Positions 31,160 to 63,900 of a DNA stretch of 64,000 nt are shown here, one piece after another. How positions within the stretch are numbered: the stretch's first letter is position 1; every line of letters starts with the position of its first letter. The position numbers and the translations under genes are program-made. Under the pieces are notes generated by a model, which did not search any database, was not told where the DNA came from, and was given only the letters and a program-made list of their open reading frames with translations. The DNA lies in the IMG/VR virus record IMGVR_UViG_3300042455_001086, positions 186,001-250,000 of that record. One strand, 5' to 3'.

Positions 31160-34100
31160 TTAATTAAATTTTACTTTTCCATCAAATGTTTTAAAATCAT
31201 TATTTAGATTTTGTGTCGAATATAAATCGACAATTCTATTATTTTGTTGGCTTGAACCACTTGTCGTTGAGGTATAGTTAAAAATATATTTGTCGGTTTC
31301 GTTTAATGGTGATTCTATTAATGATTTATATTTTTCATCGTCTTTTATTTTAGTATAGGAATCAATAATTTTTTGTGTATAACCATTAAATAATGTAACA
31401 CAAATAGTTATTGCTTTATCTAATTCTTTACTAATTATATCTTTATTTGTGAAAACCTGACTATTCAAAATAAATTCTTTAAGTGAATTTCTTTTAGATT
31501 CACTAAAGAAGGTTTGTGCCATAATCTGATAAAATCTATTTGTTGCATAGTCTTCATCTGTTGTTCCAACACCATTTGTCCAAGTAGCACCAGGAGTCCT
31601 AAAGGTATTATCTCTAAATAGAGCGTCAGATGGATTATAATGATCTTTAGCTAAAAATAAAAATTTATCTTGTTGTATAATATTTGTTGGTTCTTCAAAA
31701 AATGTTTTGTGTTTATCTTCAATTTTTTTATAGTTGTTTTTCAACAATGTAAATATATCAATTGGTGTTGTTTCGGCGGATAAATTATACGCAACCGGTT
31801 TATTTTCCGAATTTAATGAACCATCGGTTTTTGTTAAAATTAGGTTAAGTTTTCTAATATTCTGAATATAGTCTTGCTGGACATTTATAAGATTTGAAAT
31901 ATCGTTATTAAGATTTATTGAAAAATCTGACTGCATTGCTTCAATACTTTGAATTAGTCTTCTTTCAATTTCCTTTTTTTCTGAGTTTTTCAAATTAATA
32001 CTTTTGTCAATCTCTTCCATAAATGGATCTCTTCTTTTTTTAACATCTGAAATTGTTTCACTAAATAATTTATCAACCTTATTTTCTATTTTACTTGGTT
32101 TTCCATATATAGGTAAAGTTGATGAGGTTCCATATTCATCAAATTTACCTTCACTAAAATTTCTTTCATAGAATAATAAATAAACAATCCCAACATTAAA
32201 ATTTTTAGATAGGGTTATATGAGTATCAATTACAGTATCAAAATATTCTTTTGTTTTATTCCAAGTTTCATTTAATTGTTTTGTATAATCAATTTGTGTT
32301 TCGGATAAAATTGTTCCAATTGTATTTCCACCTTTTTTCGGTTGTATGTTTTCAACCTCGGCTGTTGTCACCGGTGGTTGTTGTGATAATATTTTCTCAA
32401 CAACATATTTGTCTCTAGCACTAACATCTTCAGTTGCTGTTGCTCTTTCATCATAAATTTCAGTATTTGCATAAAAATTAAATGAAAGTGCATTTTGTAA
32501 TTCCTCAACAGGTTGTTTTAATCCGTGACCACCAATAAAGTCAAAACCTAATGTAACTTTAACTATCATAGGTTGAACACCAATTCCTTCTGGATTTAAA
32601 TCATATTTAGCTTCTTCATATGCAAATGATAAGTTGCTAGGAACTATTTTACTATGGTAAAAATCCCCAACTCTTAATACTAAAATTGGTGGAGCACCAA
32701 ATGCTGTATTTAAAGCATCATTATATTTTGGTCTTCCATCGGCACCAATAATTGGTATTGTTTGTCCAGGTCTAACACATTGATTTAAAAATGTTAATCT
32801 ACCATTTAAACCTTCAGGTGTCATTGAATGGAAGGCCGGATTAAAATATTTAATCTTGTCTTTTAATGATTGAAAAATCATTGGGTCGGATTGTTTTAAC
32901 ACCTCAAAATAATCACATTCTGAAAATAAAGTTCTTAAAACTTTTTTAGATATACCATCTTTTATTTTTTGTTCTACCGTTATGTTTGGTGATGGTTTGA
33001 CTGTTTGTGCCGGATTAGTTTGAACATTTTCAACAACTTTCTTTTTTTCATCATTTTGTGGATCTGGCTCTTTATTTCCACCACCACCTTCTTTTTTTAC
33101 AGGTTCTTTTGCTTTAATGTTTTTAATCGTAACTCTTCTACAAGCCATAGCGGGTATTGAATATATCTCAGCAGCAGATGTAGTCTTATATGTGTTTCCA
33201 ACTTTTATATTCAAATTTGCATTACAATTTACACTATCTGATAATACACCTTGTTCACCAGACCCAACAACTGTAGGTCCACTTACCGCTTCGGCACTTG
33301 ATTTTGGTATCACAATTTCCTCACCTCTTGGATCTCCCTTTATAATAAGTTTTTTATTTGTGACATAGTCTTCAAAAGACTTACCATTTTTATCTTGTTG
33401 TTTTTTAAACCATTGAATTACTGAATCAATTCTTCTTTCTGATAATGTTTTATTATATGCTGGTGTTTGTACGGCTGATGCTGAACCAACCAAATCTATT
33501 GATACTTCACCACCATTTAATAAAATTTCACCAATTTTAGTTAAAAGATCACCTTTAATTTTATTGAAATTACCTTCAACAACTTGTGTAAAAAAGTTTG
33601 GAATACCAGCTTTACTCCATTCTTTATATGTTGTCCCTTCTTTGGTGTATGTAATTGCTGGTGCCGATGTATCATATTTACCTTTATTTCCGATATACCC
33701 ATCATACCAACTATCATATGGTTGGCTGGCGGTTTTACTCCAACTACCTTTACATTCAGGACAATCATTATCAAAATAAAATCCGTAGTTAATAAATTCA
33801 TCTAATGGAATATCTTTTATTGTGTCTGTTGTATTTTCTTTAGTTTTTGAACCACCACCGGTAGTAGCATTATCAGCACCAGTTGCATTGTTTTTTGCTT
33901 TATCTTCTTCTTCTGGTTTTTTTGGGATTTCAAAAGCAACTTGTCCTAATTCTTCTGATGTTAATCTTGGATTATTTAGGATTTGTTGATAGGTAAATAA
34001 ATCTCTTGTTGGAATTGTATTAAATTTAATACCTAATTCGTATAAATCATATTTTACACATCCAGCAAAAAAAGAATTAAGTATTGAGTCGACCAATTCT

Positions 34101-36211
34101 GGGTCAGCCTTTTTTAATTGTTTTTGGACAATTGTATTCATTACGGCTGGGTGATCCACAATTATTTTCCAGCTTAAACTTCCTTTTCTTGTTGTGTTTT
34201 TATATGTGTATATTGGTTCTGGTCTCCCTAAAAAAGATGTCTTATTAAATTCTGGCGAACTATCATCAGAAAATGTTAAATCGTAAGGTGGGAACCACAT
34301 AATTCTACCACCATTCGGTCCTCTTTCACAAACTGGTAAATCATCATATGTGAATCCAGGTCTATCTGATGTTCTCCAAGCAAGATTCTCAATTGAGAAC
34401 ATATATTTTTTTACTTTATTATCAACAATATTCGTTGATCCAGGATTTTTAAGTGGTGCAATATTCAAGTTGTATGTATTATCAAATATTGAATAAGAAA
34501 ACCCTCTACCTGTTTTTGTTATACCATCTGATTTTTGTAAATCGGCATAAGTGTAATATGGCGTATCTTTTGTAAAAACTCTACAATATTCAATCCCAAC
34601 TGAAGTATTGTCAGCATTGTCTTTGTAGGATAATACTTGTGAGCCTTTTGTTAGTTCTTTGTATCCATCATTAAATACTTTTGATACTTGGTTGATTGCG
34701 TTTCCAACATGTTTTAGTCTTGATAAACCGGTAACTTTGTCGGCAGATTCAACTAGTCTTTGTGTGTCGTCCAATATTGATCCTTCTTTGAAGGGAATCG
34801 TTGTTGATTGGTAACCTTGGTAATCTGCTCGTATTGTCTCAAATTGTTGATCTAAAGATGTTACTTTACCATTACGACCTTGTTTAAAACCTGCGTTGTC
34901 TTTATATTTCGGTGATGTCCAAACAAATTGTCCGGATATACCACCCCCATCACTAAGTGATTTACCCTTTAAACCATTTAATAATTTACTTTCATTTCCT
35001 TCATATAAAATACCCAATTCTTGTGGTCCATAAACAATTGTGTTAATTTGTTTTCCACCTGGTCCTACTGGTATTTGATTTGCTGGTGAGTCAATCTGTG
35101 ATGGTTCGGCTTCAGGGCTTCCAACATAATAACCACCAGTATTTGGTTTGTTTGGGTCTAAAATTCTATCAAGACCAGTTGTAATACTTTGTAATGGTCC
35201 TCTTACATATTTTGGTCTATATTTATTATAATCAAGAGATGAAAATAAAATTGATCTTTGTCCATTTCCGGTATTGGCAACAAATGTTTCTGAAGGATTT
35301 CTAAAAACATCAAGTATTGGTCCTAATAAACCACCAGTAACACCATTTACAACATTTAATGCTTTTTCAAGTTTTGGTGCTTGGAAATTAATGTCGTTAA
35401 AATAATCACCTGGGATTGTTGATGTTGGAAAATAAGTTCCTGATAATCTTAAACCAAATTCAACGGCAGCTTCAACTGGACTTTCAGATTGTGTTATTGT
35501 CCAGTTTTTATCAATAAAGGGTTCTTTACCTGCAGCAACCAAACTAGCACTAAAAGGATCTTCTAAAGAATCTAAATTTAATCTACCAATTGTTTTCTTT
35601 TTAAGTTGATCGGCAATTCTCTCCTCAAACGCACTCTTTAATTGTTGTGCTCCCAATCTAGCAAGGTATGTATCTTGAGATAATGAACCATTAGATCCAG
35701 ATGGATTTTGATTAAAAATTAAATCATATGTCTTATAAGTTGAAGCAACAAAGGATGATGGATCCCAATATGGTTGATAAAGTTTTGGATTTCCAACAAC
35801 ATCAGTAATTACCACTAAATCGGAATAACCACCTTGAGGTCCATAAATATTTTGAACATATGCCGCATCAATAAAAAATTCATTAATTAAGTCAAGAGTG
35901 GTGTCGTTTGGATCATAAGGTCCCGAATTTGAATCAACAGGATATGGTGACCCTGGTATTGAGTATTTTCCATTAAAACCACCTTCTGGTCCATATTCGT
36001 TTAATGGATATAATGTATTTGCAAATTGATTTGTGGATATTAAAGTATCTGATGAATCAATTACACTTGTTACTGTTAAATTTGTTTCATAATTTACATT
36101 AGTTGATGGGCTTGAGAATACACCTGGAACCGTATATGGTTTTAAGTTTCTAGCAATCAATTGATTTCTAAAACTTGATGAATTTGCAAACGACAATAAA
36201 CTTTCAGCCAT
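31160..36211 (-). CDS. Large tail-tube-initiator-like protein (1683 aa) with inserted OmpA-like domain
   Basis: Tube-initiator-like FLGRPEPIYTYKNTTRKGSLSWKIIVD and APPILVLRVGDFYHSK...QPMIVKVTLGF flank GSAS...YNKTLSERRIDSV...RGEE...CRRVTI; lies between tape measure and gp53-like genes. Confidence 0.6.
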   Translation of the reverse strand: MAESLLSFANSSSFRNQLIARNLKPYTVPGVFSSPSTNVNYETNLTVTSVIDSSDTLISTNQFANTLYPLNEYGPEGGFNGKYSIPGSPYPVDSNSGPYDPNDTTLDLINEFFIDAAYVQNIYGPQGGYSDLVVITDVVGNPKLYQPYWDPSSFVASTYKTYDLIFNQNPSGSNGSLSQDTYLARLGAQQLKSAFEERIADQLKKKTIGRLNLDSLEDPFSASLVAAGKEPFIDKNWTITQSESPVEAAVEFGLRLSGTYFPTSTIPGDYFNDINFQAPKLEKALNVVNGVTGGLLGPILDVFRNPSETFVANTGNGQRSILFSSLDYNKYRPKYVRGPLQSITTGLDRILDPNKPNTGGYYVGSPEAEPSQIDSPANQIPVGPGGKQINTIVYGPQELGILYEGNESKLLNGLKGKSLSDGGGISGQFVWTSPKYKDNAGFKQGRNGKVTSLDQQFETIRADYQGYQSTTIPFKEGSILDDTQRLVESADKVTGLSRLKHVGNAINQVSKVFNDGYKELTKGSQVLSYKDNADNTSVGIEYCRVFTKDTPYYTYADLQKSDGITKTGRGFSYSIFDNTYNLNIAPLKNPGSTNIVDNKVKKYMFSIENLAWRTSDRPGFTYDDLPVCERGPNGGRIMWFPPYDLTFSDDSSPEFNKTSFLGRPEPIYTYKNTTRKGSLSWKIIVDHPAVMNTIVQKQLKKADPELVDSILNSFFAGCVKYDLYELGIKFNTIPTRDLFTYQQILNNPRLTSEELGQVAFEIPKKPEEEDKAKNNATGADNATTGGGSKTKENTTDTIKDIPLDEFINYGFYFDNDCPECKGSWSKTASQPYDSWYDGYIGNKGKYDTSAPAITYTKEGTTYKEWSKAGIPNFFTQVVEGNFNKIKGDLLTKIGEILLNGGEVSIDLVGSASAVQTPAYNKTLSERRIDSVIQWFKKQQDKNGKSFEDYVTNKKLIIKGDPRGEEIVIPKSSAEAVSGPTVVGSGEQGVLSDSVNCNANLNIKVGNTYKTTSAAEIYSIPAMACRRVTIKNIKAKEPVKKEGGGGNKEPDPQNDEKKKVVENVQTNPAQTVKPSPNITVEQKIKDGISKKVLRTLFSECDYFEVLKQSDPMIFQSLKDKIKYFNPAFHSMTPEGLNGRLTFLNQCVRPGQTIPIIGADGRPKYNDALNTAFGAPPILVLRVGDFYHSKIVPSNLSFAYEEAKYDLNPEGIGVQPMIVKVTLGFDFIGGHGLKQPVEELQNALSFNFYANTEIYDERATATEDVSARDKYVVEKILSQQPPVTTAEVENIQPKKGGNTIGTILSETQIDYTKQLNETWNKTKEYFDTVIDTHITLSKNFNVGIVYLLFYERNFSEGKFDEYGTSSTLPIYGKPSKIENKVDKLFSETISDVKKRRDPFMEEIDKSINLKNSEKKEIERRLIQSIEAMQSDFSINLNNDISNLINVQQDYIQNIRKLNLILTKTDGSLNSENKPVAYNLSAETTPIDIFTLLKNNYKKIEDKHKTFFEEPTNIIQQDKFLFLAKDHYNPSDALFRDNTFRTPGATWTNGVGTTDEDYATNRFYQIMAQTFFSESKRNSLKEFILNSQVFTNKDIISKELDKAITICVTLFNGYTQKIIDSYTKIKDDEKYKSLIESPLNETDKYIFNYTSTTSGSSQQNNRIVDLYSTQNLNNDFKTFDGKVKFN

Positions 36212-36261: not shown

Positions 36262-38256
36262 TTAAATACCGCTAGTTACTTTTTTAATACCTGCATCAAG
36301 TTCTAATAAATTTTTTGGGTCGTTTTTTAATTTATCTATTATCACATTATATAATTCTGGTGGAGCATTTTTTAAAGAACCATCTGAATTTGTAATATCA
36401 ATTTTTTGTTGAACATTAAAATTTTGATCTGTTTTGGTTTCCAGAAGTGTTGTAGCTTTACTGACAAATTCTTTAATTTGTGTTATATAACTTGTGCTAA
36501 CTTCAGACTCGGTAATTGGTTGAAGTCCACCAATACCACCATATATTCCAGATACTCTTGCAGCACCTTGTTTAATACCACTTTCAGCTCCTTCTAATGC
36601 ACCCATAGTCAAACCAAAAACTCTACTCATTAAATTTTTTGGTATATCATTTAGTGTGTCCGATATTCTTGTAATATTTTCAGAAGAAAGACCACCTTCT
36701 GTGAATAAAGAAACTATAGAACTTTCAACTGGTGATGTAATATCAGTGACAGCACCTCTCACATCTTTAGTTTTTACTTTACCATATAGGTTTTCCATTG
36801 CAGATTCTCTAATAGCCAAGTTAGCTTCAGCTGCTCTTTGTAATGTTCCAGAACTTGCAACACCCATTCTTGCGGATAATTCAGTACCTTTCAAAATACC
36901 TTCAATTCTTTCTTGGACGGAAAGCTGATCTCTTGCAATTTCTTCAGCTGATTTATTTTGATTCGCTTGTTCTTTTTTTAGTTCTTCTAACTGATTAGCC
37001 GTTAAATCCTCAACCGCAACTTCTTTTTTCTCACCTGTCTCATCTGTAATCTGAACAACAGCTCTACCGTCTTTCATTTGAGACATATTAGCAATTAACA
37101 TTCTATCTTCTTCACTAGCCGCAAAACTTGGAAATCTAATTTGTTTTAATTTCATATCCAAATCAGAACTTTTGATTGCCATACCTGCCAACTCGTCGGC
37201 ACTCATACCAAGTTCTTTTGCAACTTCTCTTAATTGTAATTTAGCACCTGGTAAAATTTCAAATCCGGTTCCATCCGCTTTCAACCTTGTAAATTGTTGT
37301 GCAACCTTGGTCATTTCATCTTGGAGTTTTGCTGGGTCGTTAAGAGCCATATCCATAGCTGATAGTGGATCTAATAATTCTGTTGATGTTACACCTAATC
37401 TTTGTAATGCTGAAGTAAATTCAATTGCTGATTCTGGATTTAATAATGAATCCGCTTTTGCGAAAACTTTTTCCATATTAACACCAAGCATTGCTGATTG
37501 TGCTTGCATTTTTGCCAACCCTTGGACTCCGTTTTCAAAATTAAACAAATTAAGTTGTTTTAAATTTCCAACAACTCCGGCTGTAACTTCTTTAACATTA
37601 ACACCAACACTTTTAGCATAATTTGCAACATCGGCCATTTCATCACCAACACTTGATAGTTGTGTTCCTACACTTGAAAACTCTTTGACTAAACTTCCAA
37701 CATCAACACCGGCAAATTTGGATGTCGCGGCCAATTCTACTATGGTTTCATTAGCGATTGATGCGTTTGTTTTAAGTGCGTTTGGAATTTGTATTAATTT
37801 GTCTATTCCCTCACTTGTTGTAAAACCTAATTTTACCATTTCTGGTAAAGTATCGGCTATTGTGGATTTCAACTCACCGGCTCTTGCTCGACCAAGACCC
37901 ATTGTGTTGGCAAGTTTTTGTGACTCAATAATTAACGCATTAACATCATTTTTTACTGTTTCTAAACTAGTAAATGGTGCTGTCGCTCTACCAAGACCTT
38001 CACCTAAATCACTAACAATCCCTGAAAAATCTAAAGCACCTGCCGCTTTATCTGATGGCGTATCACTAACGGTAATTGTTGATGGAGAACTTTTTAATTC
38101 TGTTTTTTCTTTCTTGTTTTCAGCATCCGCCATACCTTGTTTATATGCGGCCTCAACGGCTTTTTTCTGGTCGGAAGATAAATCATTAACAGATTTAATT
38201 GTTGATCCAAAAATACCTTGTGCAAGTTTTAATAATAAACTATCAGTAAGACCCAT
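36262..38256 (-). CDS. Tape measure protein (664 aa)
   Basis: Ala/Leu/Ser-rich helical protein directly downstream of the chaperone and tube genes. Confidence 0.7.
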   Translation of the reverse strand: MGLTDSLLLKLAQGIFGSTIKSVNDLSSDQKKAVEAAYKQGMADAENKKEKTELKSSPSTITVSDTPSDKAAGALDFSGIVSDLGEGLGRATAPFTSLETVKNDVNALIIESQKLANTMGLGRARAGELKSTIADTLPEMVKLGFTTSEGIDKLIQIPNALKTNASIANETIVELAATSKFAGVDVGSLVKEFSSVGTQLSSVGDEMADVANYAKSVGVNVKEVTAGVVGNLKQLNLFNFENGVQGLAKMQAQSAMLGVNMEKVFAKADSLLNPESAIEFTSALQRLGVTSTELLDPLSAMDMALNDPAKLQDEMTKVAQQFTRLKADGTGFEILPGAKLQLREVAKELGMSADELAGMAIKSSDLDMKLKQIRFPSFAASEEDRMLIANMSQMKDGRAVVQITDETGEKKEVAVEDLTANQLEELKKEQANQNKSAEEIARDQLSVQERIEGILKGTELSARMGVASSGTLQRAAEANLAIRESAMENLYGKVKTKDVRGAVTDITSPVESSIVSLFTEGGLSSENITRISDTLNDIPKNLMSRVFGLTMGALEGAESGIKQGAARVSGIYGGIGGLQPITESEVSTSYITQIKEFVSKATTLLETKTDQNFNVQQKIDITNSDGSLKNAPPELYNVIIDKLKNDPKNLLELDAGIKKVTSGI

Positions 38257-39230: not shown

Positions 39231-40814
39231 TTAATCAATAGTTAATTCCCAACGAATATTTCCACAATCATATATCCTATAAATTTTTCTATCAAACATA
39301 ATTTGTTTTTCTGTTTTATCTTTATCATAACCCTCTTTCACCAGATTTGATTTATTAAAATTAAATCTATAATGTCTTTTATCACCAATTACATACCAAT
39401 AATTTGGTTTTGATTGTGAAATCATTTTAAAATTTAATTTCTCATACATTTTACCGTCAAAAATTCTAACATCAGAATATGATATTAACTTTTCTGGTTT
39501 ATATGTTGAAACAAAAGACTTTAATAATTTCGATGCCGATCCAATAACATTTGTGTTTATCTTATTACAAAATCTATTTAATTCCCATTCATCTTTTTTT
39601 CCTCCCATAATAATTCTACCTCTTGAAAATGTCATAAGTGATATTAATTCATCATTATGATATAGTCCTAGTTTTACACTTGAATTAACATTTCCCTGGA
39701 TGTGGTTTTCATCTAAAAACTTTTTAGATTCTGGTGTTGATACTTCTTTTATAATACACTTTCTAGCATATATCTTATTTTCACTAATGTTAAGTTTATT
39801 TTTTATAATTGATTTTACAATCTCTTTTTTATATATCCATTCGTCTTCAAAAATATGAACTAAACCAATTCCAAGATTATTACATTTAATCGTCTTTTCC
39901 AAATGATAATTTGGTGATTTAAATAATTCATTATGCCAATATAGACCATTGAACTCAAACCCCATTTTATACTCCGGAATAAATAAATCGACTTCAGCTT
40001 TTGAATTAGGTAATTTATAATTTGTTATGTGTGTGATATTAATCTCGGTTAAAAACTTGGAAATTTCTTCTTCATAACCACTCCTCTGACTAAAACCAAG
40101 CGGGTTACAATTTAAACAACATTCATAATTTCTTTTATGTCGTTCATACAGTAATTGTTTGGGAAGTTCGGATTCATTTTTACAAGTCGGACAAAAAATA
40201 ATAACCGAACCTTTTTTAACTTCCTTAAAACTAATATCTGGATATAAATTTTTAAAATCATTAATTAGTTTGTTTTTGTAATTATTTGATTTTGCATAAT
40301 TATCAACCCCATATTTTAACTCACAAGTTCTTTTTTGTTTATCAACATTATTGTAACTACTATTACCATAATTTATTTCTTTGGTTTTTTTACCCTTTTC
40401 AATATTATTGTAATTTTCATTACCGTATTTTTTTAATTTGGTTTCTTTTTGTTTTTTTATGAAATCATTATGTTGAGTGTAGAAATCAACACCATACTTT
40501 TTATTGAAAGTTTTCTTTTGTCTATTAATTAATTCGTCCTTTGAATTATTTGCACAAGTTAAGGAACAGAAATCACCGTATGGTTTATCAAATCTATTTC
40601 TAAATTTTATTTCATTGCCGCAAGATACGCATTTTGGTCTTTGTGTTAAATTATGAAAATAAAAATATATTTTTTCTTTAAAGGTTATATTGTCTTGGAT
40701 ATTTTTTGAATATTCAACTATTTTTGAATATAATTCTGGTTCATTATTATTTAACCATTTTTCATTGGTTTTATAACCAGATTTATTATTAGTTGTAAAA
40801 AAAGAAAAATCCAT
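39231..40814 (-). CDS. Hef-like free-standing endonuclease: Zn-finger, KYG repeats, Vsr/PD-(D/E)XK nuclease, Mom-like GNAT domain (copy 1)
   Basis: CxxC pairs, KKYGVD, EVDLFIPEYKMGFEFNGLYWH...HIFEDEW, then IYARKC...FLDENHIQG...ELNRFC...SASKLL...SYSD...IYDCG. Confidence 0.75.
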   Translation of the reverse strand: MDFSFFTTNNKSGYKTNEKWLNNNEPELYSKIVEYSKNIQDNITFKEKIYFYFHNLTQRPKCVSCGNEIKFRNRFDKPYGDFCSLTCANNSKDELINRQKKTFNKKYGVDFYTQHNDFIKKQKETKLKKYGNENYNNIEKGKKTKEINYGNSSYNNVDKQKRTCELKYGVDNYAKSNNYKNKLINDFKNLYPDISFKEVKKGSVIIFCPTCKNESELPKQLLYERHKRNYECCLNCNPLGFSQRSGYEEEISKFLTEINITHITNYKLPNSKAEVDLFIPEYKMGFEFNGLYWHNELFKSPNYHLEKTIKCNNLGIGLVHIFEDEWIYKKEIVKSIIKNKLNISENKIYARKCIIKEVSTPESKKFLDENHIQGNVNSSVKLGLYHNDELISLMTFSRGRIIMGGKKDEWELNRFCNKINTNVIGSASKLLKSFVSTYKPEKLISYSDVRIFDGKMYEKLNFKMISQSKPNYWYVIGDKRHYRFNFNKSNLVKEGYDKDKTEKQIMFDRKIYRIYDCGNIRWELTID

Positions 40815-41449: not shown

Positions 41450-43066
41450 ATGGATTTACTTAAATTTTTTATAGAAAATAATAATAGTGGTGCAAAAACT
41501 AAAGAATCTTTTTTAAAAAAAAATTATCCAGAGTTATATTTTGAAATAATTAACTACAATAACAACGATTTAATTGATTTACCCTTTAAACAAAAAATAT
41601 GGCACTACATCAATAAAATCCAAAATATACCAAAATGTCAGAATTGTGGTAATAATTTGAAATTTAAAAAATCATTAACTGAAGGTTATGGTTTATATTG
41701 TTCCGTTTTATGTGCCAACAAATGTGGAATAAGAAAAACAAAAATCAAAGAAACAAATATTGTTAAATACGGTGGAAACGCACCAATTTGTTCTGATGAT
41801 GTTAAAAATAAAATAAAAGAAAGTTTTATTAGATCATTTGGTGTTGATAATGTTTTTAAAGATAAAGAATATATAAAATCAAAAACAATAGAAAAACACA
41901 ATGTTGATCATATATCAAAACTTGATTCAACCAAAGAAAAAATAAAAAACACAAACCAAACTAAATACGGTGTTTCAACTCCTTTAGTTTTACCAGAAAT
42001 TAGACAAGTTGGGTTTGATAAAAAAACTGAATGGTTTTATTCTAAATATGAAAATTTAAATGTTATTGGTTATACCGGAAAAACAATTGAAATAAAATGT
42101 GATAAATGTAATCAACCTTATTTAATTGAGAGGTCTTTGCTGTCTTATAGATTTGAAAATGACATAAACCCTTGTATTTTGTGTAATCCAATAAATGATT
42201 TAAAATCATTTAAAGAAAAACAAATCTGTGAATTTTTAGATGAACATAATATTAAATATGTTGAAAATGACCGCAATATTCTTAAAGGTCAAGAATTAGA
42301 TATTTTTATACCAGAACATAATATTGCCATTGAATTTGACGGTTTGTTTTGGCATTCAGATAAATTTAAAGACAAACAATATCATAGTTTAAAAACAAAT
42401 GAATGTAAAAAACTAGGTATTAGAGTGGTTCATATTTTTGAAGATGAATGGGATAATAAAAAAGAAATTGTAAAAAGTAGAATTAAAACATTATTAGGTC
42501 TTACTAGTGTTCGTGTTTTTGCTAGAAATTGTGAAGTAAAATATGTCGACACACAAACAAAAACAAAATTCTTGGAAGAAAACCATATCCAGGGCTCAGT
42601 TGGTAGTAAATTTAATTTAGGTTTATATTACAATTCAAATTTAATATCTATAATGACATTTGGTAAAAAAAGATTAAATCTTGGATATAAAAAAACAGAA
42701 AACAATGAATATGAATTACTTCGTTTTTGTAATAAACTAAACCACATTGTTGTTGGGGGTGCGTCTAAGCTACTTAAAAGGTTTATCGTTGATCAATCAC
42801 CAAAAGAAATTATAAGTTATGCTGATAAGAGGTGGAGTAATGGTAATTTATATGAGAAGTTGAACTTTTCTTTTGTAAAAGAAACAACACCGAATTATTA
42901 CTATGTCGTTAATAAAAAAAGAGAATCAAGATTCAAATACAGAAAAGATGTTTTGGTTGATTTGGGATATGATTCAAATAAAAGTGAATTTGAGATAATG
43001 GAAGAAAGAGGTATTCCAAAAATTTATGATTGTGGAAATCTATTATACAAAAAATCCCTAAAGTAA
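41450..43066 (+). CDS. Hef-like endonuclease with Mom-like GNAT domain (copy 2)
   Basis: Same architecture as copy 1: ELDIFIPEHNIAIEFDGLFWHS...HIFEDEW; VFARNC...FLEENHIQG...ELLRFC...GGASKLL...ISYAD...IYDCG. Confidence 0.75.
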   Translation: MDLLKFFIENNNSGAKTKESFLKKNYPELYFEIINYNNNDLIDLPFKQKIWHYINKIQNIPKCQNCGNNLKFKKSLTEGYGLYCSVLCANKCGIRKTKIKETNIVKYGGNAPICSDDVKNKIKESFIRSFGVDNVFKDKEYIKSKTIEKHNVDHISKLDSTKEKIKNTNQTKYGVSTPLVLPEIRQVGFDKKTEWFYSKYENLNVIGYTGKTIEIKCDKCNQPYLIERSLLSYRFENDINPCILCNPINDLKSFKEKQICEFLDEHNIKYVENDRNILKGQELDIFIPEHNIAIEFDGLFWHSDKFKDKQYHSLKTNECKKLGIRVVHIFEDEWDNKKEIVKSRIKTLLGLTSVRVFARNCEVKYVDTQTKTKFLEENHIQGSVGSKFNLGLYYNSNLISIMTFGKKRLNLGYKKTENNEYELLRFCNKLNHIVVGGASKLLKRFIVDQSPKEIISYADKRWSNGNLYEKLNFSFVKETTPNYYYVVNKKRESRFKYRKDVLVDLGYDSNKSEFEIMEERGIPKIYDCGNLLYKKSLK

Positions 43067-44033: not shown

Positions 44034-45557
44034 TTAATTTATTTTCAATTCAAATTTTAACGAACCACAATCCCATATCCTATCATATTTTTTTAATTTC
44101 ATAATTTCCCATTCTGTTAATTCTTTATTGTAACCTTCTTTGACTAAAACATCTTTCCTAAACGAAAATCTATGTGATCTATTTAAATATCTTTCTGTGT
44201 TTATATACCAATAATTTGGTGGTGTTTGTTTTACGAAATTAAAACCATTTTTAAAATACACAGTTTTTGTTTGATCTAAACCAGACCATCGAATATCAGC
44301 AAATGTTTCTATTTTAGATGGATTATATTTTTTAATGAAGTTCTTTAATAGTTTAGAAAATCCACCAATAATTGTTAAATTAATTTTATTACAAAATCTA
44401 ACTAACTCATATTCTGAATTATCCCTATTATCATTACCTAATGATTTTCTTTTTTTTCCAAATGTCATAACAGAAACTAATTCATCATTATAAAATAGAC
44501 CAAATCTAACCTTATCTATCGAATTTCCTTGTAAATGGTTATTTGTTAAAAACAATGAGGATTCTTTTTTTGGAATTTCTTTTATTTCACATTTTCTGGC
44601 GAAAATTTTATTACTCAATTCTAATTTATTTTTTAATTTTGACAACACAATATCTTTCTTTAATAAGATTTCATCTTCATAAAATTGAATGAGGGTGATT
44701 CCTTTATCATAACAAAGTTTTGTTTTATCAATATGATAATTTTTTGTTTTTTCACCACTTATTTCAGAATGGTAATAATTACCATTAACCTCAATTCCAA
44801 TATTATAATCCGGTAAATAAATATCTATTTCTCTACCATTTAGTATTTTTCTATCACCATCAATATGTTTAACACCTATACTATTTAGATAATCTTTAAT
44901 TATTTGTTCCAGTTTTGAATTTTTAATAATTGGGTAACACTTACGACATATCGGAATTTTACCAGAACCTAAAATTGTGCTACTAAAGATATTGTCACAT
45001 TTACAACATTTAAACATATAAGGTTGTGATGTTTTACCACTTTTATTAGCCACATATGTATCTAATATCTCAAGATTATTTTCATTTAATTTTGGTAGTA
45101 AATTTAATAAATGTTTATCTCTCAATGTTGATTTTAATTTGTCGACAAATTCCGGAACTAACATTGGGGATTTAACTCCGTATTTTTTCATAAAAATACT
45201 CTCATACGACTCTTTGAATTCTTTTGTTTTAAACAAACTATCAACCCCATATTTTTGACGGAGTGTGTTCTTCGATTTGCCTAACCGATATTCAATATGT
45301 TTAGGATTTGAGTTCCATAATATTCTACATTCTTCCGAACATATTTTTTTCTGATGTTTCTTCCTTTCTTCAAATTCTTTACCACATTGAACGCAAGTTC
45401 TTATTTCTCTAACATTAGAGTCTTTCGTCTTACCAAGTAATTTATTCTTTCTAGCGTAGTTAAAATAACAACTTCTATCACAAAATTTCTTATCTCTGTG
45501 TTTAAAATCAGTAATAAATGATTTATTACAAGATAAACATTCTAATTCAACTTTCAT
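44034..45557 (-). CDS. Hef-like endonuclease with Mom-like GNAT domain (copy 3)
   Basis: Two CxxC...FC/ICxxxC Zn modules, KYGV repeats, EIDIYLPDYNIGIEVNGNYYHS...QFYEDE, IFARKC...NHLQG...ELVRFC...IWDCG; likely start MKVELEC at 45557. Confidence 0.75.
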   Translation of the reverse strand: MKVELECLSCNKSFITDFKHRDKKFCDRSCYFNYARKNKLLGKTKDSNVREIRTCVQCGKEFEERKKHQKKICSEECRILWNSNPKHIEYRLGKSKNTLRQKYGVDSLFKTKEFKESYESIFMKKYGVKSPMLVPEFVDKLKSTLRDKHLLNLLPKLNENNLEILDTYVANKSGKTSQPYMFKCCKCDNIFSSTILGSGKIPICRKCYPIIKNSKLEQIIKDYLNSIGVKHIDGDRKILNGREIDIYLPDYNIGIEVNGNYYHSEISGEKTKNYHIDKTKLCYDKGITLIQFYEDEILLKKDIVLSKLKNKLELSNKIFARKCEIKEIPKKESSLFLTNNHLQGNSIDKVRFGLFYNDELVSVMTFGKKRKSLGNDNRDNSEYELVRFCNKINLTIIGGFSKLLKNFIKKYNPSKIETFADIRWSGLDQTKTVYFKNGFNFVKQTPPNYWYINTERYLNRSHRFSFRKDVLVKEGYNKELTEWEIMKLKKYDRIWDCGSLKFELKIN

Positions 45558-45626
45558 CGGTAAAATATATTTAATAGTTATGAGTATGTCTCTACAAATA
45601 AATATACGAAGATAATATAAAAAAAC

Positions 45627-45657
45627 AAAATCCCCCAAAAAAAATTTGAGGGATTTT
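45627..45657 (-). terminator. Terminator downstream of the sheath gene
   Basis: AAAATCCCTCAAA...TTTGGGGGATTTT stem on the minus strand followed by a T-rich run. Confidence 0.6.
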
Positions 45658-56649: not shown

Positions 56650-57017
56650 TAAAGGTTGAAAATTTAACACCCAGAAAAAATGTTGTTAGATACCAAACAC
56701 AAACAGTTGTTGAACCGAAAGTGGTCATTGAAACCCCAAAGGAGGTTTGTAAAGTAATTTCTGAAACACAATATGTAACAAATGATGAAACTTTTTTAAT
56801 TGTAAAAGAAGTTGATTATTCTGAAGTTACTTTAAATTCTAATATATCTACAAAAATTACAATAAAATCATTAACAAGTGTTTTAGTTAAATCAGATGTT
56901 GGTTCTATTGACGAAGAATGGGATGAACTCCTTTTAGAAAAAGGAGCTTGTGTTCAATTCCAATTTGTTGAGGGTAACTGGTATGTTAAAGCAAGTGATG
57001 GTCTAAAGATGGGTTAG
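56646..57017 (+). CDS. Hypothetical protein (123 aa), probably structural
   Basis: ATGA overlap with the neck gene; beta-rich, ends GNWYV. Confidence 0.6.
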
Positions 57018-57175
57018 ATTATCTTTGATCCTTTACTCAAATTTTCTTTAGCCCATAGTGGTTGTAGATTTGTGTAATGACAAAGCTTGTAAATTTCTTC
57101 TTCGTTTTTTGCCGATGATAGTGGTATTATGTGGTCAATATGCCAACCATAAAATCCATAATTATCCCAAAACAT
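57014..57175 (-). pseudogene. C-terminal fragment of an HNH endonuclease (53 aa)
   Basis: [53 protein letters not shown]; not in the ORF track. Confidence 0.8.
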
Positions 57176-60208: not shown

Positions 60209-60237
60209 AATATATTGGATTGGTTGTGTATTGTCAA
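60209..60237 (-). promoter_or_regulatory. Sigma70-type promoter of the DNA polymerase gene
   Basis: Minus strand TTGACA-N17-TATATT, overlapping a TATTTAT motif. Confidence 0.65.
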
Positions 60238-60257: not shown

Positions 60258-61838
60258 TTATGAATGTGTTATAATCCAGTTATATGGGGATCCGGTTAAA
60301 AAATTTCTTGCGGCAATTCCATCGTAACCACCTGAACTAGCATCTGGTGCGCCGTTTGTTCCCCCTATTTTTAAATTAATATTTGACCATCCGGTCGGAT
60401 TGTAAGTAGCGTTTCCACTAAAATCGACCAAAATGTGGTTTACATCAGAAGATGACATATTATTATCATATAATCCAATAATAGGTCTCCCTTGTGTTGC
60501 CCCTGATATTAATGTGGCTCCTGATAATGGTTTAAAATCAACATAATCTAAATTACAGTCAAACATTCTAAAAGCCGAGAACGAATCGTTATTACTAGTA
60601 TTTCTAAAAAAAGTATTGACGTTAGGAAAAATAACATTAGTTAAATTATCATTACCGCTAACTTGGATATACCCTGTCGAAGCGGAGCTTGACCCACCTA
60701 ATTTTGTTAAATTTGTTAAATTCAAATTTCCGGTTAGGTTACAATTATTAGCCAAATAAGACGTAAAATTTTGTGATGATTGTGTATGCGTTATATTTGT
60801 TAAACCGGTATTATTATATATCGAAAAATTACCACCCAAACCTGATAATGGTGTTAAATCTAAATTTCCTGTTAAATTACAAGAATGCACAGAATAATTA
60901 CTAAAATTTTGTGATGATTGTGTATGTGTAATACCAGTTAAATTGGAATTAGAATGAGCTTGAAAATTACCACCCAATCCTGATAATGGTGTTAAATCTA
61001 AATTTCCTGTTAAATTACAAGAATACACAGAATAAGACGTAAAATTTCGTGATGATTGTGTATGTGTAATACCAGTTAAATTGGGATTACTATAAGATCT
61101 AAAATCACCACCCAAACCTGATAATGGCGTTAAATCTAAATTTCCTGTTAGGTTACAATTATTAGCCCAATATCTTGTAAAATTTTGTGATGATGGTGAA
61201 TGTGTAATACCAGTTAAGTTTAAGTTATTATTAACATAAAATTCACCTCCCAAACCAGATAATGGTGTTAAATCTAAATTTCCTGTTAAATTACAAGAAT
61301 ACACAGAATAAGACGTAAAATTTCGTGATGATTGTGTATGTGTAATACCAGTTAAATTGGAATTATTCTGAGTTTGAAAATCGCCACCCAAACCTGATAA
61401 TGGTGTTAAATCTAAATTTCCTGTTAAATTACAAGAATACACAGAATAAGTACTAAAATTTTGTGATGATGATGAATGTGTTATTCCTGTCAATCTTGGG
61501 TTATTTGAAACAATAAAAACCCCACCCAAACCTAATAATGGTGTTAAATCTAATTTACCATATATGTTATCATTAAATAAATTAAATCCATTAATGTTAC
61601 TAAAACTATTACCTCTCATTTGAATGGTTCTAATTTCTGTGTCAGCAGAAAACCCACTATATGTGATTGAATTTCCGGCTGTTTGTGTAATATTTGTCCC
61701 ATTATTAAGTTTCCAAGAAACCCTTCTTGAACCACTACTAAATGTAACATCCGGATCAAATGATGTTGTTGACCCACTTTTTTGAAATGTCAGTACTTGA
61801 CCTATATTATTTCTTGATGTAAATTGTTGCCTACTCAT
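60258..61838 (-). CDS. LRR-like tandem repeat protein (526 aa), putative receptor-binding/surface protein
   Basis: 46-aa repeats CNLTGNLDLTPLSGLGGxFxxxxNxNLTGITH; C-terminal cap VNHILVD...W; follows a fibre-like gene. Confidence 0.7.
   Translation of the reverse strand: MSRQQFTSRNNIGQVLTFQKSGSTTSFDPDVTFSSGSRRVSWKLNNGTNITQTAGNSITYSGFSADTEIRTIQMRGNSFSNINGFNLFNDNIYGKLDLTPLLGLGGVFIVSNNPRLTGITHSSSSQNFSTYSVYSCNLTGNLDLTPLSGLGGDFQTQNNSNLTGITHTQSSRNFTSYSVYSCNLTGNLDLTPLSGLGGEFYVNNNLNLTGITHSPSSQNFTRYWANNCNLTGNLDLTPLSGLGGDFRSYSNPNLTGITHTQSSRNFTSYSVYSCNLTGNLDLTPLSGLGGNFQAHSNSNLTGITHTQSSQNFSNYSVHSCNLTGNLDLTPLSGLGGNFSIYNNTGLTNITHTQSSQNFTSYLANNCNLTGNLNLTNLTKLGGSSSASTGYIQVSGNDNLTNVIFPNVNTFFRNTSNNDSFSAFRMFDCNLDYVDFKPLSGATLISGATQGRPIIGLYDNNMSSSDVNHILVDFSGNATYNPTGWSNINLKIGGTNGAPDASSGGYDGIAARNFLTGSPYNWIITHS
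60700..61565 (-). repeat. 138-nt tandem repeat, about 6 copies
   Basis: CCTGATAATGGTGTTAAATCTAAATTTCC-like anchor at 60841, 60979, 61117, 61255, 61393 and 61531 (period 138). Confidence 0.92.
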
Positions 61839-61847
61839 AATTAAATT

Positions 61848-62747
61848 TTAGGCATAGTCATTACCAACTGTCCAATACATTGTTGTTCCGTTGTATGTAA
61901 ATGTTATTATATCGGTAGCATTTGCATTTGATGTCAATATTATACCACCACCTCCGTTTGCAACACTATGTGTTACCACACCACCATTAACATTACCTAA
62001 ACTTAATGTTCTTCCACCAACAGCGTCTTGTGTGACAATTAAAGTCCCGTATTCGCCATTTCTTACATTTGTTAATGTTAATGTTGTGTTTGCTGTCAAT
62101 GTTACTTGATAATTTGTGCTAACACCAGAAACATTCCAGTTGAATGAAGTTCCGGTTGAACCGATGTTGGTATATGAACTAATTGGTGTCCCAGTAACCG
62201 ATATTGTGAAGTTTCCATTAGTTCCACTTATTGCAATATTATTACCAGGAGTTAAACCACTAATTGGTAAATTTTGATATGTTGTAGCACTTATTGTTGT
62301 AGCTGTTAAACCTTGTAAAGAAGTATTACCAGTTACAGTTAAGTTTCCATTAACATTTAATGTATTTGCACTTAGTCCACCAGTAAAATTCGTTTCACCA
62401 CTTACAGTTCCACCAGTAAATGATGTTCCGGTTGATCCTGTGAAATTAACACCAAAGTTAGGATATGTTCCAGTAATACTTAAATTGGTTCCTCCACTAA
62501 TACTTACAACCTGATCTGGACTTGTATTTGTTATTGTAAAGTTAGGATATGTTCCTCCAGTTAATATTCCAGTTCCTCCAGATATTGATACTGTATTTCC
62601 GGAATTTATATATGTTTTTAAGTTTGTAATTGTTGTTTGACTTGTTGTTCCACTCAAAACCGTGTAATTTACAATTGGTAATATATCTGTTGGTGTATAT
62701 TGTACACTACTAACAGAAGGTAATTGTGATATTTTTTTATTTGCCAT
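61848..62747 (-). CDS. Tail fibre/adhesin-like protein (Gly/Thr/Ser-rich)
   Basis: MANKKISQLP start, repeated VSISGGT...GTYPNF, C-terminal LIVTQDAVGGRTL...NATDIITFTYNG domain. Confidence 0.6.
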   Translation of the reverse strand: MANKKISQLPSVSSVQYTPTDILPIVNYTVLSGTTSQTTITNLKTYINSGNTVSISGGTGILTGGTYPNFTITNTSPDQVVSISGGTNLSITGTYPNFGVNFTGSTGTSFTGGTVSGETNFTGGLSANTLNVNGNLTVTGNTSLQGLTATTISATTYQNLPISGLTPGNNIAISGTNGNFTISVTGTPISSYTNIGSTGTSFNWNVSGVSTNYQVTLTANTTLTLTNVRNGEYGTLIVTQDAVGGRTLSLGNVNGGVVTHSVANGGGGIILTSNANATDIITFTYNGTTMYWTVGNDYA

Positions 62748-62772: not shown

Positions 62773-63900
62773 TTATGAAGATATTTCTGTCGCAAAGCAA
62801 ATTTCTCCTTTTTCTCTAATTAATCTTTCCATATCATTGAAGGAAATATAAGCTGTGCCATTTATACCCCAACTTCTACCCCAACTATTTTTCATTCTAA
62901 ATATTCTTTTTCTTGTGTCAACACCATTTATCACATAGGCATGACCTCCAAGTAAAGGACCACCAATTCTTATATTTCCATTTCTATCTGGAAAGAACAT
63001 ATTTCTATACCAATTTGTCCCAACCACTACCGGTCCAATATTTAAAACAGAATCAATTAATGTTTGAAGTGTATAACCCCAATAATAATTTCTTACCTTA
63101 CCTACTTGTTGTAGATATTTTACACCACCCCTTACCGAAGTTCCATTATAGTTTTCACCTGGCCATTCATCAAGTTTTTGAGCGTTTTCATAAATTATTT
63201 TAGGTTGAATGATTGGCGCAACACCTGGTTGTCCAATTGGACCGTCTTCCAACCAATGAGCCCAAGAAAAACCAACACAATGCGGTGTATTTCCTTGATT
63301 TCCCCACCATCCATTATCATCCCAATATCTTGATGTTATTGTCACCCTTGATCTTGATGAGGTTAAAAGGTGGTTTTCAATTAAATAATTATTATCCCGT
63401 TCATCTGGCTTATGTGTTCTACCAAGTGGAAATTCTGTTTCGACAACTGTTGTTGTTGCTGTTACTGGAATAACTGGTGTTGAAACACAACAAGGAAATT
63501 CTGAAACATAACAACTTTCATATGGTAAATCATCACCTATAAAACTTTCTTGGATATTAATATATAATTTTTCTCTTATCGGTAAAATTAAAACACCCTC
63601 GTTCTCGGTTCTAAATAAAAACTGACCTTCAAATCTCCCAACCTTATTTGTGTCTTTTGACTGGAATTGGTAATAAACATAATACTCAACCGGAGCATTT
63701 GGATCCGTAAATTCTTTTTTTGTGAAACCAGCCGGCCTTGTCACTATTTTTGGAATTCCGGTTTCAACATCTGACATTGAAAAGAATATTGCTGATTCCT
63801 CAATGAAATTCATAAAACTATTGTAGTCACTTCTACCGTCTTTTACCACTTGAATTTTTAACAATGGTAATGTTGCGTTCTTTTTAATATAAAATTCCAT
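62773..63900 (-). CDS. BppU-like Ig domain fused to a papain-like (C1) cysteine peptidase
   Basis: N-terminal FYIKKNATLPLLK...YQFQSKDTNKVGRFEGQF; catalytic motifs QGNTPHCVGFSW, GGHAYVING, KNSWG. Confidence 0.8.
   Translation of the reverse strand: MEFYIKKNATLPLLKIQVVKDGRSDYNSFMNFIEESAIFFSMSDVETGIPKIVTRPAGFTKKEFTDPNAPVEYYVYYQFQSKDTNKVGRFEGQFLFRTENEGVLILPIREKLYINIQESFIGDDLPYESCYVSEFPCCVSTPVIPVTATTTVVETEFPLGRTHKPDERDNNYLIENHLLTSSRSRVTITSRYWDDNGWWGNQGNTPHCVGFSWAHWLEDGPIGQPGVAPIIQPKIIYENAQKLDEWPGENYNGTSVRGGVKYLQQVGKVRNYYWGYTLQTLIDSVLNIGPVVVGTNWYRNMFFPDRNGNIRIGGPLLGGHAYVINGVDTRKRIFRMKNSWGRSWGINGTAYISFNDMERLIREKGEICFATEISS

What the first reader, a model, noticed from the sequence alone, without database searches (positions are those of the whole stretch)
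60700..61565. LRR-like array with invariant scaffold and hypervariable strand residues
Seen: across six 46-aa units the scaffold is nearly identical even in DNA. The segment after LGG differs in every copy (VFIVSN, DFQTQN, EFYVNN, DFRSYS, NFQAHS, NFSIYN). A second segment alternates between SV(Y/H)S and ANN types in mosaic order. Known: in LRR solenoids such strand positions form the ligand-binding face. Inference: a recombination-shuffled, receptor-like binding surface for host range, located beside the fibre genes.
Basis: partly seen in the sequence, partly recalled or inferred. Interest (0 to 1): 0.6.

Follow-up and report, generated by a model that had tools for sequence, protein, structure and literature searches.

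The report
Hypervariable leucine-rich-repeat adhesin of a jumbo phage
A freshwater jumbo phage carries, right after a tail-fibre-like gene, a leucine-rich-repeat protein whose scaffold is nearly constant, whose exposed strand residues differ in every repeat and whose repeat number changes between related phages, which makes it the likeliest host-recognition protein, on a scaffold I found no description of for phages.

Summary

Variation sits at the exposed x positions of the LxxLxLxx strand, in register every 23 residues. This holds in the six window units, in 525 units from other proteins and between close orthologues.

More than 386 relatives carry 2-8 units between constant ends. No Pfam LRR model or PHROG family matches; the one Pfam match looks like a repeat artefact. 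All source contigs I examined look viral, and a limited two-pattern scan of 185,579 prokaryote species genomes found none.

In two related phages whose flanks are 93-99% identical, identity falls to 53-79% from the array to the stop codon, with a one-unit indel. Near-identical alleles differ by exact one- or two-unit indels.

The genome has no reverse transcriptase and no silent cassettes, so diversification is evolutionary, not programmed.

A fibre-like gene with a conserved C-terminal domain precedes the LRR gene in all seven relatives' loci examined. A host-range role is therefore a well-founded inference, but it is untested.

The parts
60258..61838 (-). LRR protein gene, 526 aa, single copy in the 257-kb phage genome
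61554..61838 (-). N-terminal region, aa 1-95: beta-rich cap, conserved across the family, candidate attachment end
   Evidence: Consensus and invariant columns in A1. The N-terminal ~180 aa stay 94-97% identical in DNA between L011 and L012 while the rest diverges. No Pfam hit.
60726..61553 (-). Six exact 46-aa units (138 nt each; starts at 61553, 61415, 61277, 61139, 61001, 60863). Each is two 23-aa LRRs, with hypervariable columns 12, 14, 16, 17 and 35, 37, 39, 40
   Evidence: Model strands fall at unit columns 11-16 and 33-39 in all six units.
60588..60725 (-). Degenerate seventh unit, aa 372-417
   Evidence: 22-26% identity to the other units. Modelled as further solenoid rungs.
60258..60587 (-). 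C-terminal region, aa 418-526, plus the stop codon: conserved cap with two helices
   Evidence: Helices at aa 463-479 and 507-515. Highly conserved in A1. No Pfam hit.
60982..61084 (.). 103-nt exact direct repeat, copy 1 (unit 4 column 19 to unit 5 column 7). Its partner is at 61258-61360
   Evidence: Substrate for unequal crossing-over or conversion, and the place where short-read unitigs break.
61258..61360 (.). 103-nt exact direct repeat, copy 2 (unit 2 column 19 to unit 3 column 7)
61848..62747 (-). Upstream fibre-like gene, 299 aa. It ends 9 nt before the LRR start. Gly/Thr-rich shaft of variable length and a conserved ~115-aa C-terminal beta domain
   Evidence: The C-terminal domain is 55-67% identical in three relatives' upstream genes of 543-871 aa. 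All seven relatives' loci have this gene in the same position. Weak PF26209 (phage tail fibre C-terminal) hit in the L010 homologue. Atlas lead to a tail-fibre C-terminal cluster, score 0.90. Weak PHROG 'tail assembly protein' hit. Own fold was poor.
62773..63900 (-). Papain-like peptidase gene, first of the three co-oriented genes
   Evidence: phrog_16701 peptidase, 3e-57. Peptidase_C1, 3.6e-4.
60209..60237 (-). Promoter-like site between the LRR stop and the polB start. It may separate the two transcription units (weak)
   Evidence: 11 of 12 consensus match. The number of such sites in the region is no higher than in shuffles.

Best explanation
The gene encodes a roughly 14-rung leucine-rich-repeat solenoid that most likely serves as the distal receptor-binding adhesin of a short tail fibre of a freshwater jumbo myovirus.

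Shown:
- The fold is an LRR solenoid built from a 46-aa super-repeat of two 23-aa LRRs, with alternating Asn and Cys ladder positions.
- Four exposed positions per rung of the LxxLxLxx strand are hypervariable, while the core and the second sheet are conserved.
- The family varies in unit number (2-8).
- Related phages have exchanged the array plus the C-terminal cap.

Inferred:
- The conserved N-terminal region docks on the conserved C-terminal domain of the fibre-like protein encoded 9 nt upstream.
- The hypervariable sheet, rich in Asn, Ser, Gln, Tyr, Arg and Trp, contacts a variable host surface molecule.
- New specificities arise in three ways. One is substitutions at the exposed positions, kept by selection. 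Another is unequal crossing-over or gene conversion between the near-identical scaffold DNA of the units, which adds, removes or chimerises units. The third is homologous recombination between phages, which swaps the distal part of the gene.
For: Fold:
- pLDDT 91.7.
- Atlas neighbours are LRR_4 / LRR_8 clusters.

Where the variation sits:
- Across 535 units, the highest entropy (2.6-3.7 bits) is at columns 12, 14, 16, 17 and 35, 37, 39, 40. These alternate with conserved F13, V15, N18 and Y36, A38, C41.
- Those columns lie in the model strands at 11-16 and 33-39 of every unit.
- The hypervariable positions are enriched in Gln, Arg, Trp and Tyr.

Selection:
- Among the window units, dN/dS is 1.63 at variable codons and 0.16 at scaffold codons.
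- With independently defined columns, the clustering has p 1.4e-5.
- In 8 disjoint pairs of close orthologues, 30.3% of residues differ at the hypervariable columns against 7.6% elsewhere, p 1e-20.

Modularity:
- Protein lengths are quantised in about 46-aa steps, with 2-8 units between constant ends.
- Alleles with 99-100% identical ends differ by exact 46- or 92-aa indels with chimeric junctions.
- A 103-nt exact repeat lies inside the window array.
- One lake run holds a chimeric unit.

RBP-like mosaic:
- Between L011 and L012 the flanks are 93-99% identical.
- Identity falls to 53-79% from mid-gene to the stop codon, with a one-unit indel, and returns to 99% directly after the stop.

Context:
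- A fibre-like gene lies immediately upstream in all seven relatives' loci examined.
- The phage is a myovirus: sheath, tube and baseplate hub are in the window.
- A 31%-identical LRR stretch lies in a 2241-aa protein next to the annotated tail fiber protein of Synechococcus phage DSL-LC03.
Against: - There is no direct evidence that the protein is in the virion or binds anything.
- No PHROG family matches, and the only Pfam match is an apparent repeat artefact.
- In this genome the gene is followed by the DNA polymerase gene rather than by more tail genes.
- Phage fibres are usually trimeric, whereas LRR solenoids are usually monomers.
- The hypervariable-codon set used for dN/dS was chosen from the same six units. 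The tests avoid that circularity.
- Copy-number differences between near-identical metagenomic alleles could in part be short-read assembly collapse.
Confidence: 0.6

Rival explanations
1. An intracellular LRR protein that binds a host protein, for example a defence sensor or a takeover target. It would diversify in an arms race inside the cell, not at the cell surface.
For: LRRs are classic protein-protein binders. The gene abuts the polB gene in this genome. No structural PHROG family matches. The complex prediction gave no support for fibre binding, which the tool says is no evidence either way.
Against: Tight, conserved pairing with a fibre-like gene in all seven relatives' loci examined. 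In four of them (L005, L008, L011, L012) it sits among large SprB- or DUF285-bearing proteins. The mosaic of conserved N-terminus and swapped distal part, typical of receptor-binding proteins, is present.
Confidence: 0.17
2. A virion surface adhesin that binds something other than the entry receptor, such as particles, polysaccharide matrix or non-host surfaces. It would raise encounter rates, like Ig-like decoration proteins.
For: Same structural and evolutionary evidence as the main explanation. The Asn/Ser/Gln/Tyr-rich variable face would suit glycan binding.
Against: The diversification and unit turnover between near-identical phages fit a co-evolving specific target better than a generic substrate. 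The gene is paired with a fibre-like gene, not with head genes.
Confidence: 0.15
3. A neutrally expanding tandem repeat, or an assembly artefact, with no special role for the variable positions.
For: Short-read contigs break inside the array. A 103-nt exact repeat exists.
Against: Variation is confined to the same in-register exposed columns in 525 independent units and in orthologous pairs. The scaffold is under purifying selection, dN/dS 0.16. The fold is confident. The unique pieces of the array are recovered identically in three runs.
Confidence: 0.03
4. Programmed diversification: a diversity-generating retroelement, or cassette-based gene conversion from silent copies.
For: Extreme local variability within a constant scaffold.
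Against: No reverse transcriptase in the complete genome, with working controls. No further copy of the unit anywhere in the genome by HMM, blastn or tblastn. The array pieces are identical across three lake runs from 2020 to 2024.
Confidence: 0.02

Closest known systems
gp38-type tail-fibre adhesins of T2/T6/S16-like phages (my own knowledge: Trojet et al. 2011; Dunne et al. 2018)
   Same: A separate adhesin gene directly follows the fibre gene. A constant scaffold carries short hypervariable segments. Alleles are mosaic through recombination. The N-terminal part is conserved for attachment.
   Different: gp38 uses glycine-rich motifs that form a polyglycine-II sandwich, not an LRR solenoid. 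It has no copy-number-variable tandem units. There is no sequence or fold relation here.
Listeria internalins, especially InlJ (PDB 3bz5)
   Different: Here Asn- and Cys-ladder repeats alternate to give a 46-aa super-repeat. There is no signal peptide, Ig-like inter-repeat domain or cell-wall anchor. The protein is phage-encoded. No sequence-level match was found.
Variable lymphocyte receptors of jawless fish and plant NLR/RLK LRR domains (my own knowledge)
   Same: Diversity is concentrated on the exposed x residues of the LxxLxLxx strand. The number of LRR modules varies. Recombination between modules occurs. The NLTG motif resembles plant-specific LRRs. RPP1 LRR and plant receptor ectodomains are among the structural hits.
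   Different: There is no somatic assembly from donor cassettes, since none are in the genome. Diversification is between phage lineages.
Mtd, the DGR-diversified receptor-binding protein of Bordetella phage BPP-1 (my own knowledge)
   Same: A phage host-recognition protein with a few hypervariable exposed residues on a fixed scaffold.
   Different: Mtd has a C-type-lectin fold and depends on reverse transcriptase with adenine-directed mutagenesis. Here the genome has no reverse transcriptase and no second copy of the unit that could serve as a template repeat.
LRR-like stretch in the giant fibre-module protein WJZ47902.1 of Synechococcus phage DSL-LC03
   Same: 31% identity over about 260 aa of the array. 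It is encoded directly after the annotated tail fiber protein.
   Different: There it is one domain of a 2241-aa protein annotated as hypothetical. It lacks the N- and C-terminal regions of this family.

Membership tests
Leucine-rich repeat (LRR) superfamily | Tandem 20-30-residue repeats with the LxxLxLxxN/CxL motif | tested here: met
   23-aa period. F13-x-V15-x-x-N18-x-x-L21 and Y36-x-A38-x-x-C41-x-L43. Conserved in 535 units (N18 in 526, C41 in 494).
Leucine-rich repeat (LRR) superfamily | Solenoid fold with a parallel beta-sheet formed by the motif strands | tested here: met
Leucine-rich repeat (LRR) superfamily | Match to a curated LRR sequence model (Pfam LRR clan) | tested here: not met
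   No LRR family at E <= 0.1. The only hit is an additive Bile_Hydr_Trans hit with no single stretch passing, which I take to be spurious. No PDB sequence hit with the family profile.
Phage receptor-binding protein / tail-fibre adhesin | Encoded in or next to the tail-fibre genes | tested here: met
   A fibre-like gene lies 9-16 nt upstream in the window and in all seven relatives' loci examined. The fibre identity itself rests on weak hits.
Phage receptor-binding protein / tail-fibre adhesin | Conserved proximal part and a divergent, recombining distal part between related phages | tested here: met
   L011 against L012: 94-97% identity up to about aa 180, then 53-79% to the stop codon with a one-unit indel. 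Flanks are 93-99% identical.
Phage receptor-binding protein / tail-fibre adhesin | Physical association with the fibre or virion | tested here: inconclusive
   Complex prediction of the LRR protein with the fibre C-terminal domain gave no verdict (score 0.00). Virion proteomics is not available.
Phage receptor-binding protein / tail-fibre adhesin | Binds a host surface receptor and determines adsorption | not testable with these tools
   The host is unknown. This needs an isolate or recombinant protein.
Diversity-generating retroelement target | Reverse transcriptase and a template repeat near the variable region | tested here: not met
   No RVT_1 in the complete 257-kb genome, with controls positive. 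No second copy of the unit.
gp38-like adhesins | Glycine-rich motifs forming a polyglycine-II sandwich that bears the hypervariable segments | tested here: not met
   The fold is an LRR solenoid.
Cassette-assembled LRR receptors (VLR-like) | Silent donor LRR cassettes elsewhere in the genome | tested here: not met
   Outside the gene, unit HMM, blastn and tblastn give only chance-level hits.

The most novel reading that the evidence does not exclude
This is the founding example of a large, so far unannotated class of phage receptor-binding proteins built on an LRR solenoid. Host specificity would be written in about four exposed residues per rung. It would be re-written by adding, deleting and chimerising 46-aa units and by swapping arrays between phages: a natural, modular, VLR-like binder platform in viruses of bacteria. 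A further untested twist is that the neighbouring phage glycosyltransferase cluster modifies the sequon-rich protein.
Probability: 0.45. Interest if true: 0.75.

Novelty: new variant of a known kind. Interest (0 to 1): 0.62.

Why it matters
Host recognition proteins are the hardest part of uncultured phage genomes to read, and known receptor-binding folds are mostly trimeric fibres, spikes and lectin-like tips. A widespread, structurally predictable LRR family would help in three ways:
- Its binding residues can be listed from sequence alone, which gives a handle for predicting and comparing host specificity in freshwater jumbo phages.
- It offers a natural system for studying how tandem-repeat recombination and selection jointly retarget a binding surface.
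- It is a compact monomeric scaffold of possible use as an engineered binder.

It also shows that curated family libraries miss a family of several hundred members or more.

Tried and rejected
- **Pfam, PHROGs and PDB sequence searches of the protein and its ends.** No informative hit. The Bile_Hydr_Trans match is a sum of weak repeat hits with no single stretch passing, so I take it as spurious.
- **Complex prediction, LRR protein plus fibre C-terminal domain.** No verdict, score 0.00. It is not evidence either way.
- **AF2 of the upstream fibre-like protein.** Poor model: pLDDT 47, with only aa 190-296 at 60-75. I did not use it for fold search.
- **Reads.** Only Logan contigs were available, and they break inside the array. 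Copy number and unit order within a population could therefore not be measured.
- **L002.** It is 100% identical to the genome over 15.2 kb, so it is not independent.
- **DGR and silent-cassette mechanisms.** Rejected.
- **Scan of 185,579 prokaryote species genomes with two family patterns.** No relative found. The pattern set was limited, so this is weak evidence of absence.
- **Moraphage lineage (PMC12619734).** Considered because of the aquatic jumbo genome, the glycosyltransferases and the multiple homing endonucleases. This genome has no HSP70, so membership is left open.
- **Six literature searches.** I found no description of an LRR receptor-binding protein in phages.
- **The S-S-A-S-S-A order as proof of shuffling.** Rejected, because it is also a 414-nt higher-order repeat.

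Full report
**1. What is there**

The finding lies on the minus strand inside one ORF, window 60258-61838, 526 aa.

- Tandem Repeats Finder gives a 138-nt period with 6.1 copies at 60714-61553. It also gives a 414-nt period with 2.0 copies.
- Translation shows six units in exact 46-aa register, aa 96-371, window 61553-60726. They are followed by a degenerate seventh unit (aa 372-417) and a 109-aa C-terminal region, and preceded by a 95-aa N-terminal region.
- Each 46-aa unit is really two 23-aa LRRs. One has F13-x-V15-x-x-N18-x-x-L21 and the other has Y36-x-A38-x-x-C41-x-L43, so an Asn and a Cys alternate at the ladder position.
- Scaffold codons are largely identical in DNA. Units 2, 4 and 5 are 98% identical over scaffold codons.
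- A 103-nt exact repeat links the unit 2-3 junction with the unit 4-5 junction.

**2. Is the pattern more than chance?**

Among the six units, Nei-Gojobori counts give dN/dS 0.16 at scaffold codons and 1.63 at the variable codons. For the youngest pairs (2-4, 2-5, 4-5), pN at variable codons is 0.23-0.38 while scaffold pS is 0.08-0.10. That codon set was chosen from the same six units, so I repeated the test in two ways that avoid the circularity.

- **Columns defined from other proteins.** I took the columns with more than 2.5 bits of entropy in 525 units of other proteins: 12, 14, 16, 17, 27, 28, 35, 37, 39, 40. In the window array, 22 of 30 nucleotide sites vary in those columns against 31 of 108 elsewhere (p 1.4e-5).
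- **Orthologous units.** In eight disjoint pairs of close alleles with equal unit number, residues differ at 30.3% of the eight strand positions against 7.6% elsewhere (p 1e-20).

**3. Fold and the position of the variable residues**

- AlphaFold2 with a 27-sequence alignment gives pLDDT 91.7 and pTM 0.88.
- Foldseek's top hits are LRR proteins with weak E-values.
- The model's strands fall at unit columns 11-16, 21-25, 33-39 and 45-48 in all six units.
- The hypervariable columns 12, 14, 16 and 35, 37, 39 lie inside the first and third strands. They alternate with the conserved hydrophobic 13, 15 and 36, 38. Columns 17 and 40 follow directly.
- Because 12+23=35, 14+23=37, 16+23=39 and 17+23=40, the variable residues form four stripes in register on one parallel sheet. 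These are the canonical exposed x positions of LxxLxLxx.
- The second sheet (columns 21-25 and 45-48) is conserved.
- I could not read coordinates, so 'one face' rests on the strand assignment, the 23-residue register and known LRR geometry.
- Family-wide, these positions are enriched in Gln, Arg, Glu, Trp, Tyr, Asn and Ser. They are depleted in Leu, Gly and Pro, as expected for an exposed binding surface.

**4. The family**

- The word-indexed protein search found 386 relatives at E <= 0.001 among 8000 scored candidates. None carried an informative name.
- Their lengths cluster at about 386, 432, 478, 526, 574, 620 and 660 aa.
- A unit HMM counts 2-8 full units between a constant ~100-aa N-terminus and a constant ~156-aa C-terminus.
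- The 535 units carry 413 distinct first-LRR signatures and 430 distinct second-LRR signatures. Units within one protein almost never share a signature.
- The source contigs I examined are up to about 394 kb and look viral. The Atlas places the family's own clusters in Uroviricota, next to LRR_4 / LRR_8 clusters of viruses and Bacteroidota.
- A two-pattern scan of 185,579 prokaryote species genomes found no relative.
- No Pfam LRR model and no PHROG family match. The one Pfam match looks like a repeat artefact. No PDB sequence matches.

**5. Evidence for recombination and unit turnover**

- **L011 against L012.** These two syntenic phage contigs are 93-99% identical in the flanks. Inside the LRR gene identity is 94-97% up to about nt 540. 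It then falls to 53-79%, with a 124-nt gap block (one unit), and returns to 99% in the window directly after the stop codon. This is a swapped distal cassette.
- **Near-identical alleles.** Pairs with 99-100% identical N- and C-termini differ by exact in-frame indels: 46 aa (P0055/P0100, P0005/P0042) or 92 aa (P0038/P0099). In P0055/P0100 and P0038/P0099 the junction lies within repeated segments, which in P0038/P0099 leaves a chimeric unit.
  - Caveat: short-read assemblers can collapse such repeats, so some of these may be artefacts.
- **Lake run X9.** A 168-nt contig carries unit 5's first LRR joined to a second LRR of the unit 2/4 type. The changes are at 60887, 60898-60901 and 60910, that is unit columns 39, 34-35 and 31.
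- **Units 2 and 4 in the window.** They share 103 identical nucleotides, including synonymous sites, yet differ at 7 of the 15 nucleotides in columns 14-17 and 19. Point mutation alone is an unlikely cause. Conversion of the scaffold, or import of the variable tract, is implied.
- **Unit order.** The S-S-A-S-S-A order is also a 3-unit higher-order repeat, so on its own it is not evidence of shuffling.

**6. What it is not**

- The complete 257,166-bp genome has no reverse transcriptase, with controls positive.
- It has no other copy of the unit by HMM, blastn or tblastn.
- The unique pieces of the array are identical in lake-water runs of three studies from 2020, 2021 and 2024.

Diversification is therefore evolutionary, between lineages. 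It is not programmed hypermutation or cassette switching.

**7. Context**

- The window is bases 186001-250000 of a 257-kb virus record with inverted terminal repeats. The terminal 127 nt are a perfect inverted repeat.
- Tail sheath, tail tube and baseplate hub genes make it a myovirus.
- The LRR gene is the last of three co-oriented genes: a papain-like peptidase (phrog_16701), a 299-aa fibre-like protein, then the LRR gene. A 110-nt spacer with a promoter-like site separates it from polB.
- The 299-aa protein has a Gly/Thr-rich shaft and a conserved ~115-aa C-terminal beta domain.
- In all seven relatives' loci examined, a homologue of this protein (249-871 aa) directly precedes the LRR gene, 10-16 nt away. 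These homologues share the C-terminal domain, and their shafts vary in length.
- The L010 homologue has a weak PF26209 (phage tail fibre C-terminal) hit. The Atlas gives the same lead.
- A fibre whose tip domain is conserved, followed by a hypervariable binder gene, is the arrangement of gp37-gp38 in T2-like phages (my own knowledge).
- In Synechococcus phage DSL-LC03, a 31%-identical LRR stretch lies within a 2241-aa protein encoded directly after the annotated tail fiber protein.

**8. Interpretation**

The functional part, a receptor-binding surface that sets host range, is the best explanation (confidence about 0.6) but it remains inference.

- The complex prediction with the fibre domain gave no verdict.
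- The monomer fold of the fibre was poor.

Rivals are an intracellular host-protein binder, a virion adhesin for non-receptor substrates, a neutral repeat or artefact, and programmed diversification. The last two are contradicted by the data.

**9. Novelty**

Hypervariable LRR faces are known (VLRs, plant NLRs), and so are mosaic phage adhesins (gp38, DGR targets). In six full-text searches I found no description of an LRR-based phage receptor-binding protein with copy-number-variable units. The family is invisible to Pfam's LRR models and to PHROGs.

I rate it a new variant of a known kind, with interest 0.62.

Noticed in passing
L013 931-5142 (= genome 249931-254142, just beyond the window's right end): A glycosylation gene cluster lies upstream of the peptidase-fibre-LRR group. 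It holds UDP-galactopyranose mutase (GLF, 2.8e-75), an FkbM methyltransferase, a group-1 glycosyltransferase and a PF11397 GlcNAc-transferase (2.4e-61). A PF11397 gene also lies within 8 kb of the LRR gene in L005, L008, L011 and L012. Whether it modifies virion proteins, DNA or the host surface is unknown.
   Followed up: partly
L011 3900-4790 against L012: The only other strong divergence hot spot between these two 93-99% identical phages is the 5' part of the PF11397 glycosyltransferase gene, at 65-80% identity. The glycosyltransferase and the LRR array seem to diversify together.
   Followed up: no
window 60258-61838: The LRR protein has 30 N-x-S/T sequons against 18.0 +/- 3.4 in shuffles. 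They sit mostly at conserved unit columns 20, 32 and 42. This may be only a by-product of the NLTG motif, or they may be sites for the neighbouring glycosyltransferases.
   Followed up: partly
window 39231-40814 (-), 41450-43066 (+), 44034-45638 (-): Three paralogous ~530-aa homing-endonuclease-like genes (phrog_3339 at 1e-112 to 2e-126, with HNH and Mom-like parts) are interspersed between the tail tube, sheath and baseplate genes. The moraphage paper PMC12619734 reports multiple PacI-like homing endonucleases in aquatic jumbo phages.
   Followed up: partly
window 62203-62435 (upstream fibre-like gene): Contigs in runs X1 and X4 show a 'goes back 233' joint with 13 extra letters and many variant letters at 62247-62391. 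Relatives carry 1-3 copies of an ~80-aa shaft module, giving proteins of 249-871 aa. The fibre shaft is therefore also modular and variable in length.
   Followed up: partly
L005 9872-10093, L006 9728-9952, L008 9728-9949: A conserved 73-74-aa ORF (52-83% identical) directly follows the LRR gene in three relatives. It is absent from this genome by tblastn, and no such ORF is called after the LRR gene in L011 or L012. It may be a chaperone or an accessory factor.
   Followed up: partly
window 57014-57175 (-): A small HNH endonuclease-like ORF (53 aa with an HNH-type His motif) lies just downstream of the family-B DNA polymerase gene.
   Followed up: no
window 24120-30845, 31160-36211, 36262-38256 (-): Giant ORFs of 2241, 1683 and 664 aa lie next to the baseplate hub gene and have no PHROG hit. 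They are probably baseplate or fibre proteins of unknown type.
   Followed up: no
window 60258-61838: Pfam reports Bile_Hydr_Trans (PF04775) above its gathering score (41.5 bits), but no single stretch passes. The same hit is precomputed for relatives P0009/L010. I take it to be a repeat-summing artefact, and it could mislead automatic annotation. One relative is named 'pentapeptide repeats' by JGI.
   Followed up: yes
genome ends (G000 1-127 and 257040-257166): The record ends in a perfect 127-nt inverted terminal repeat. This is unusual for a tailed phage and may be an assembly feature.
   Followed up: no
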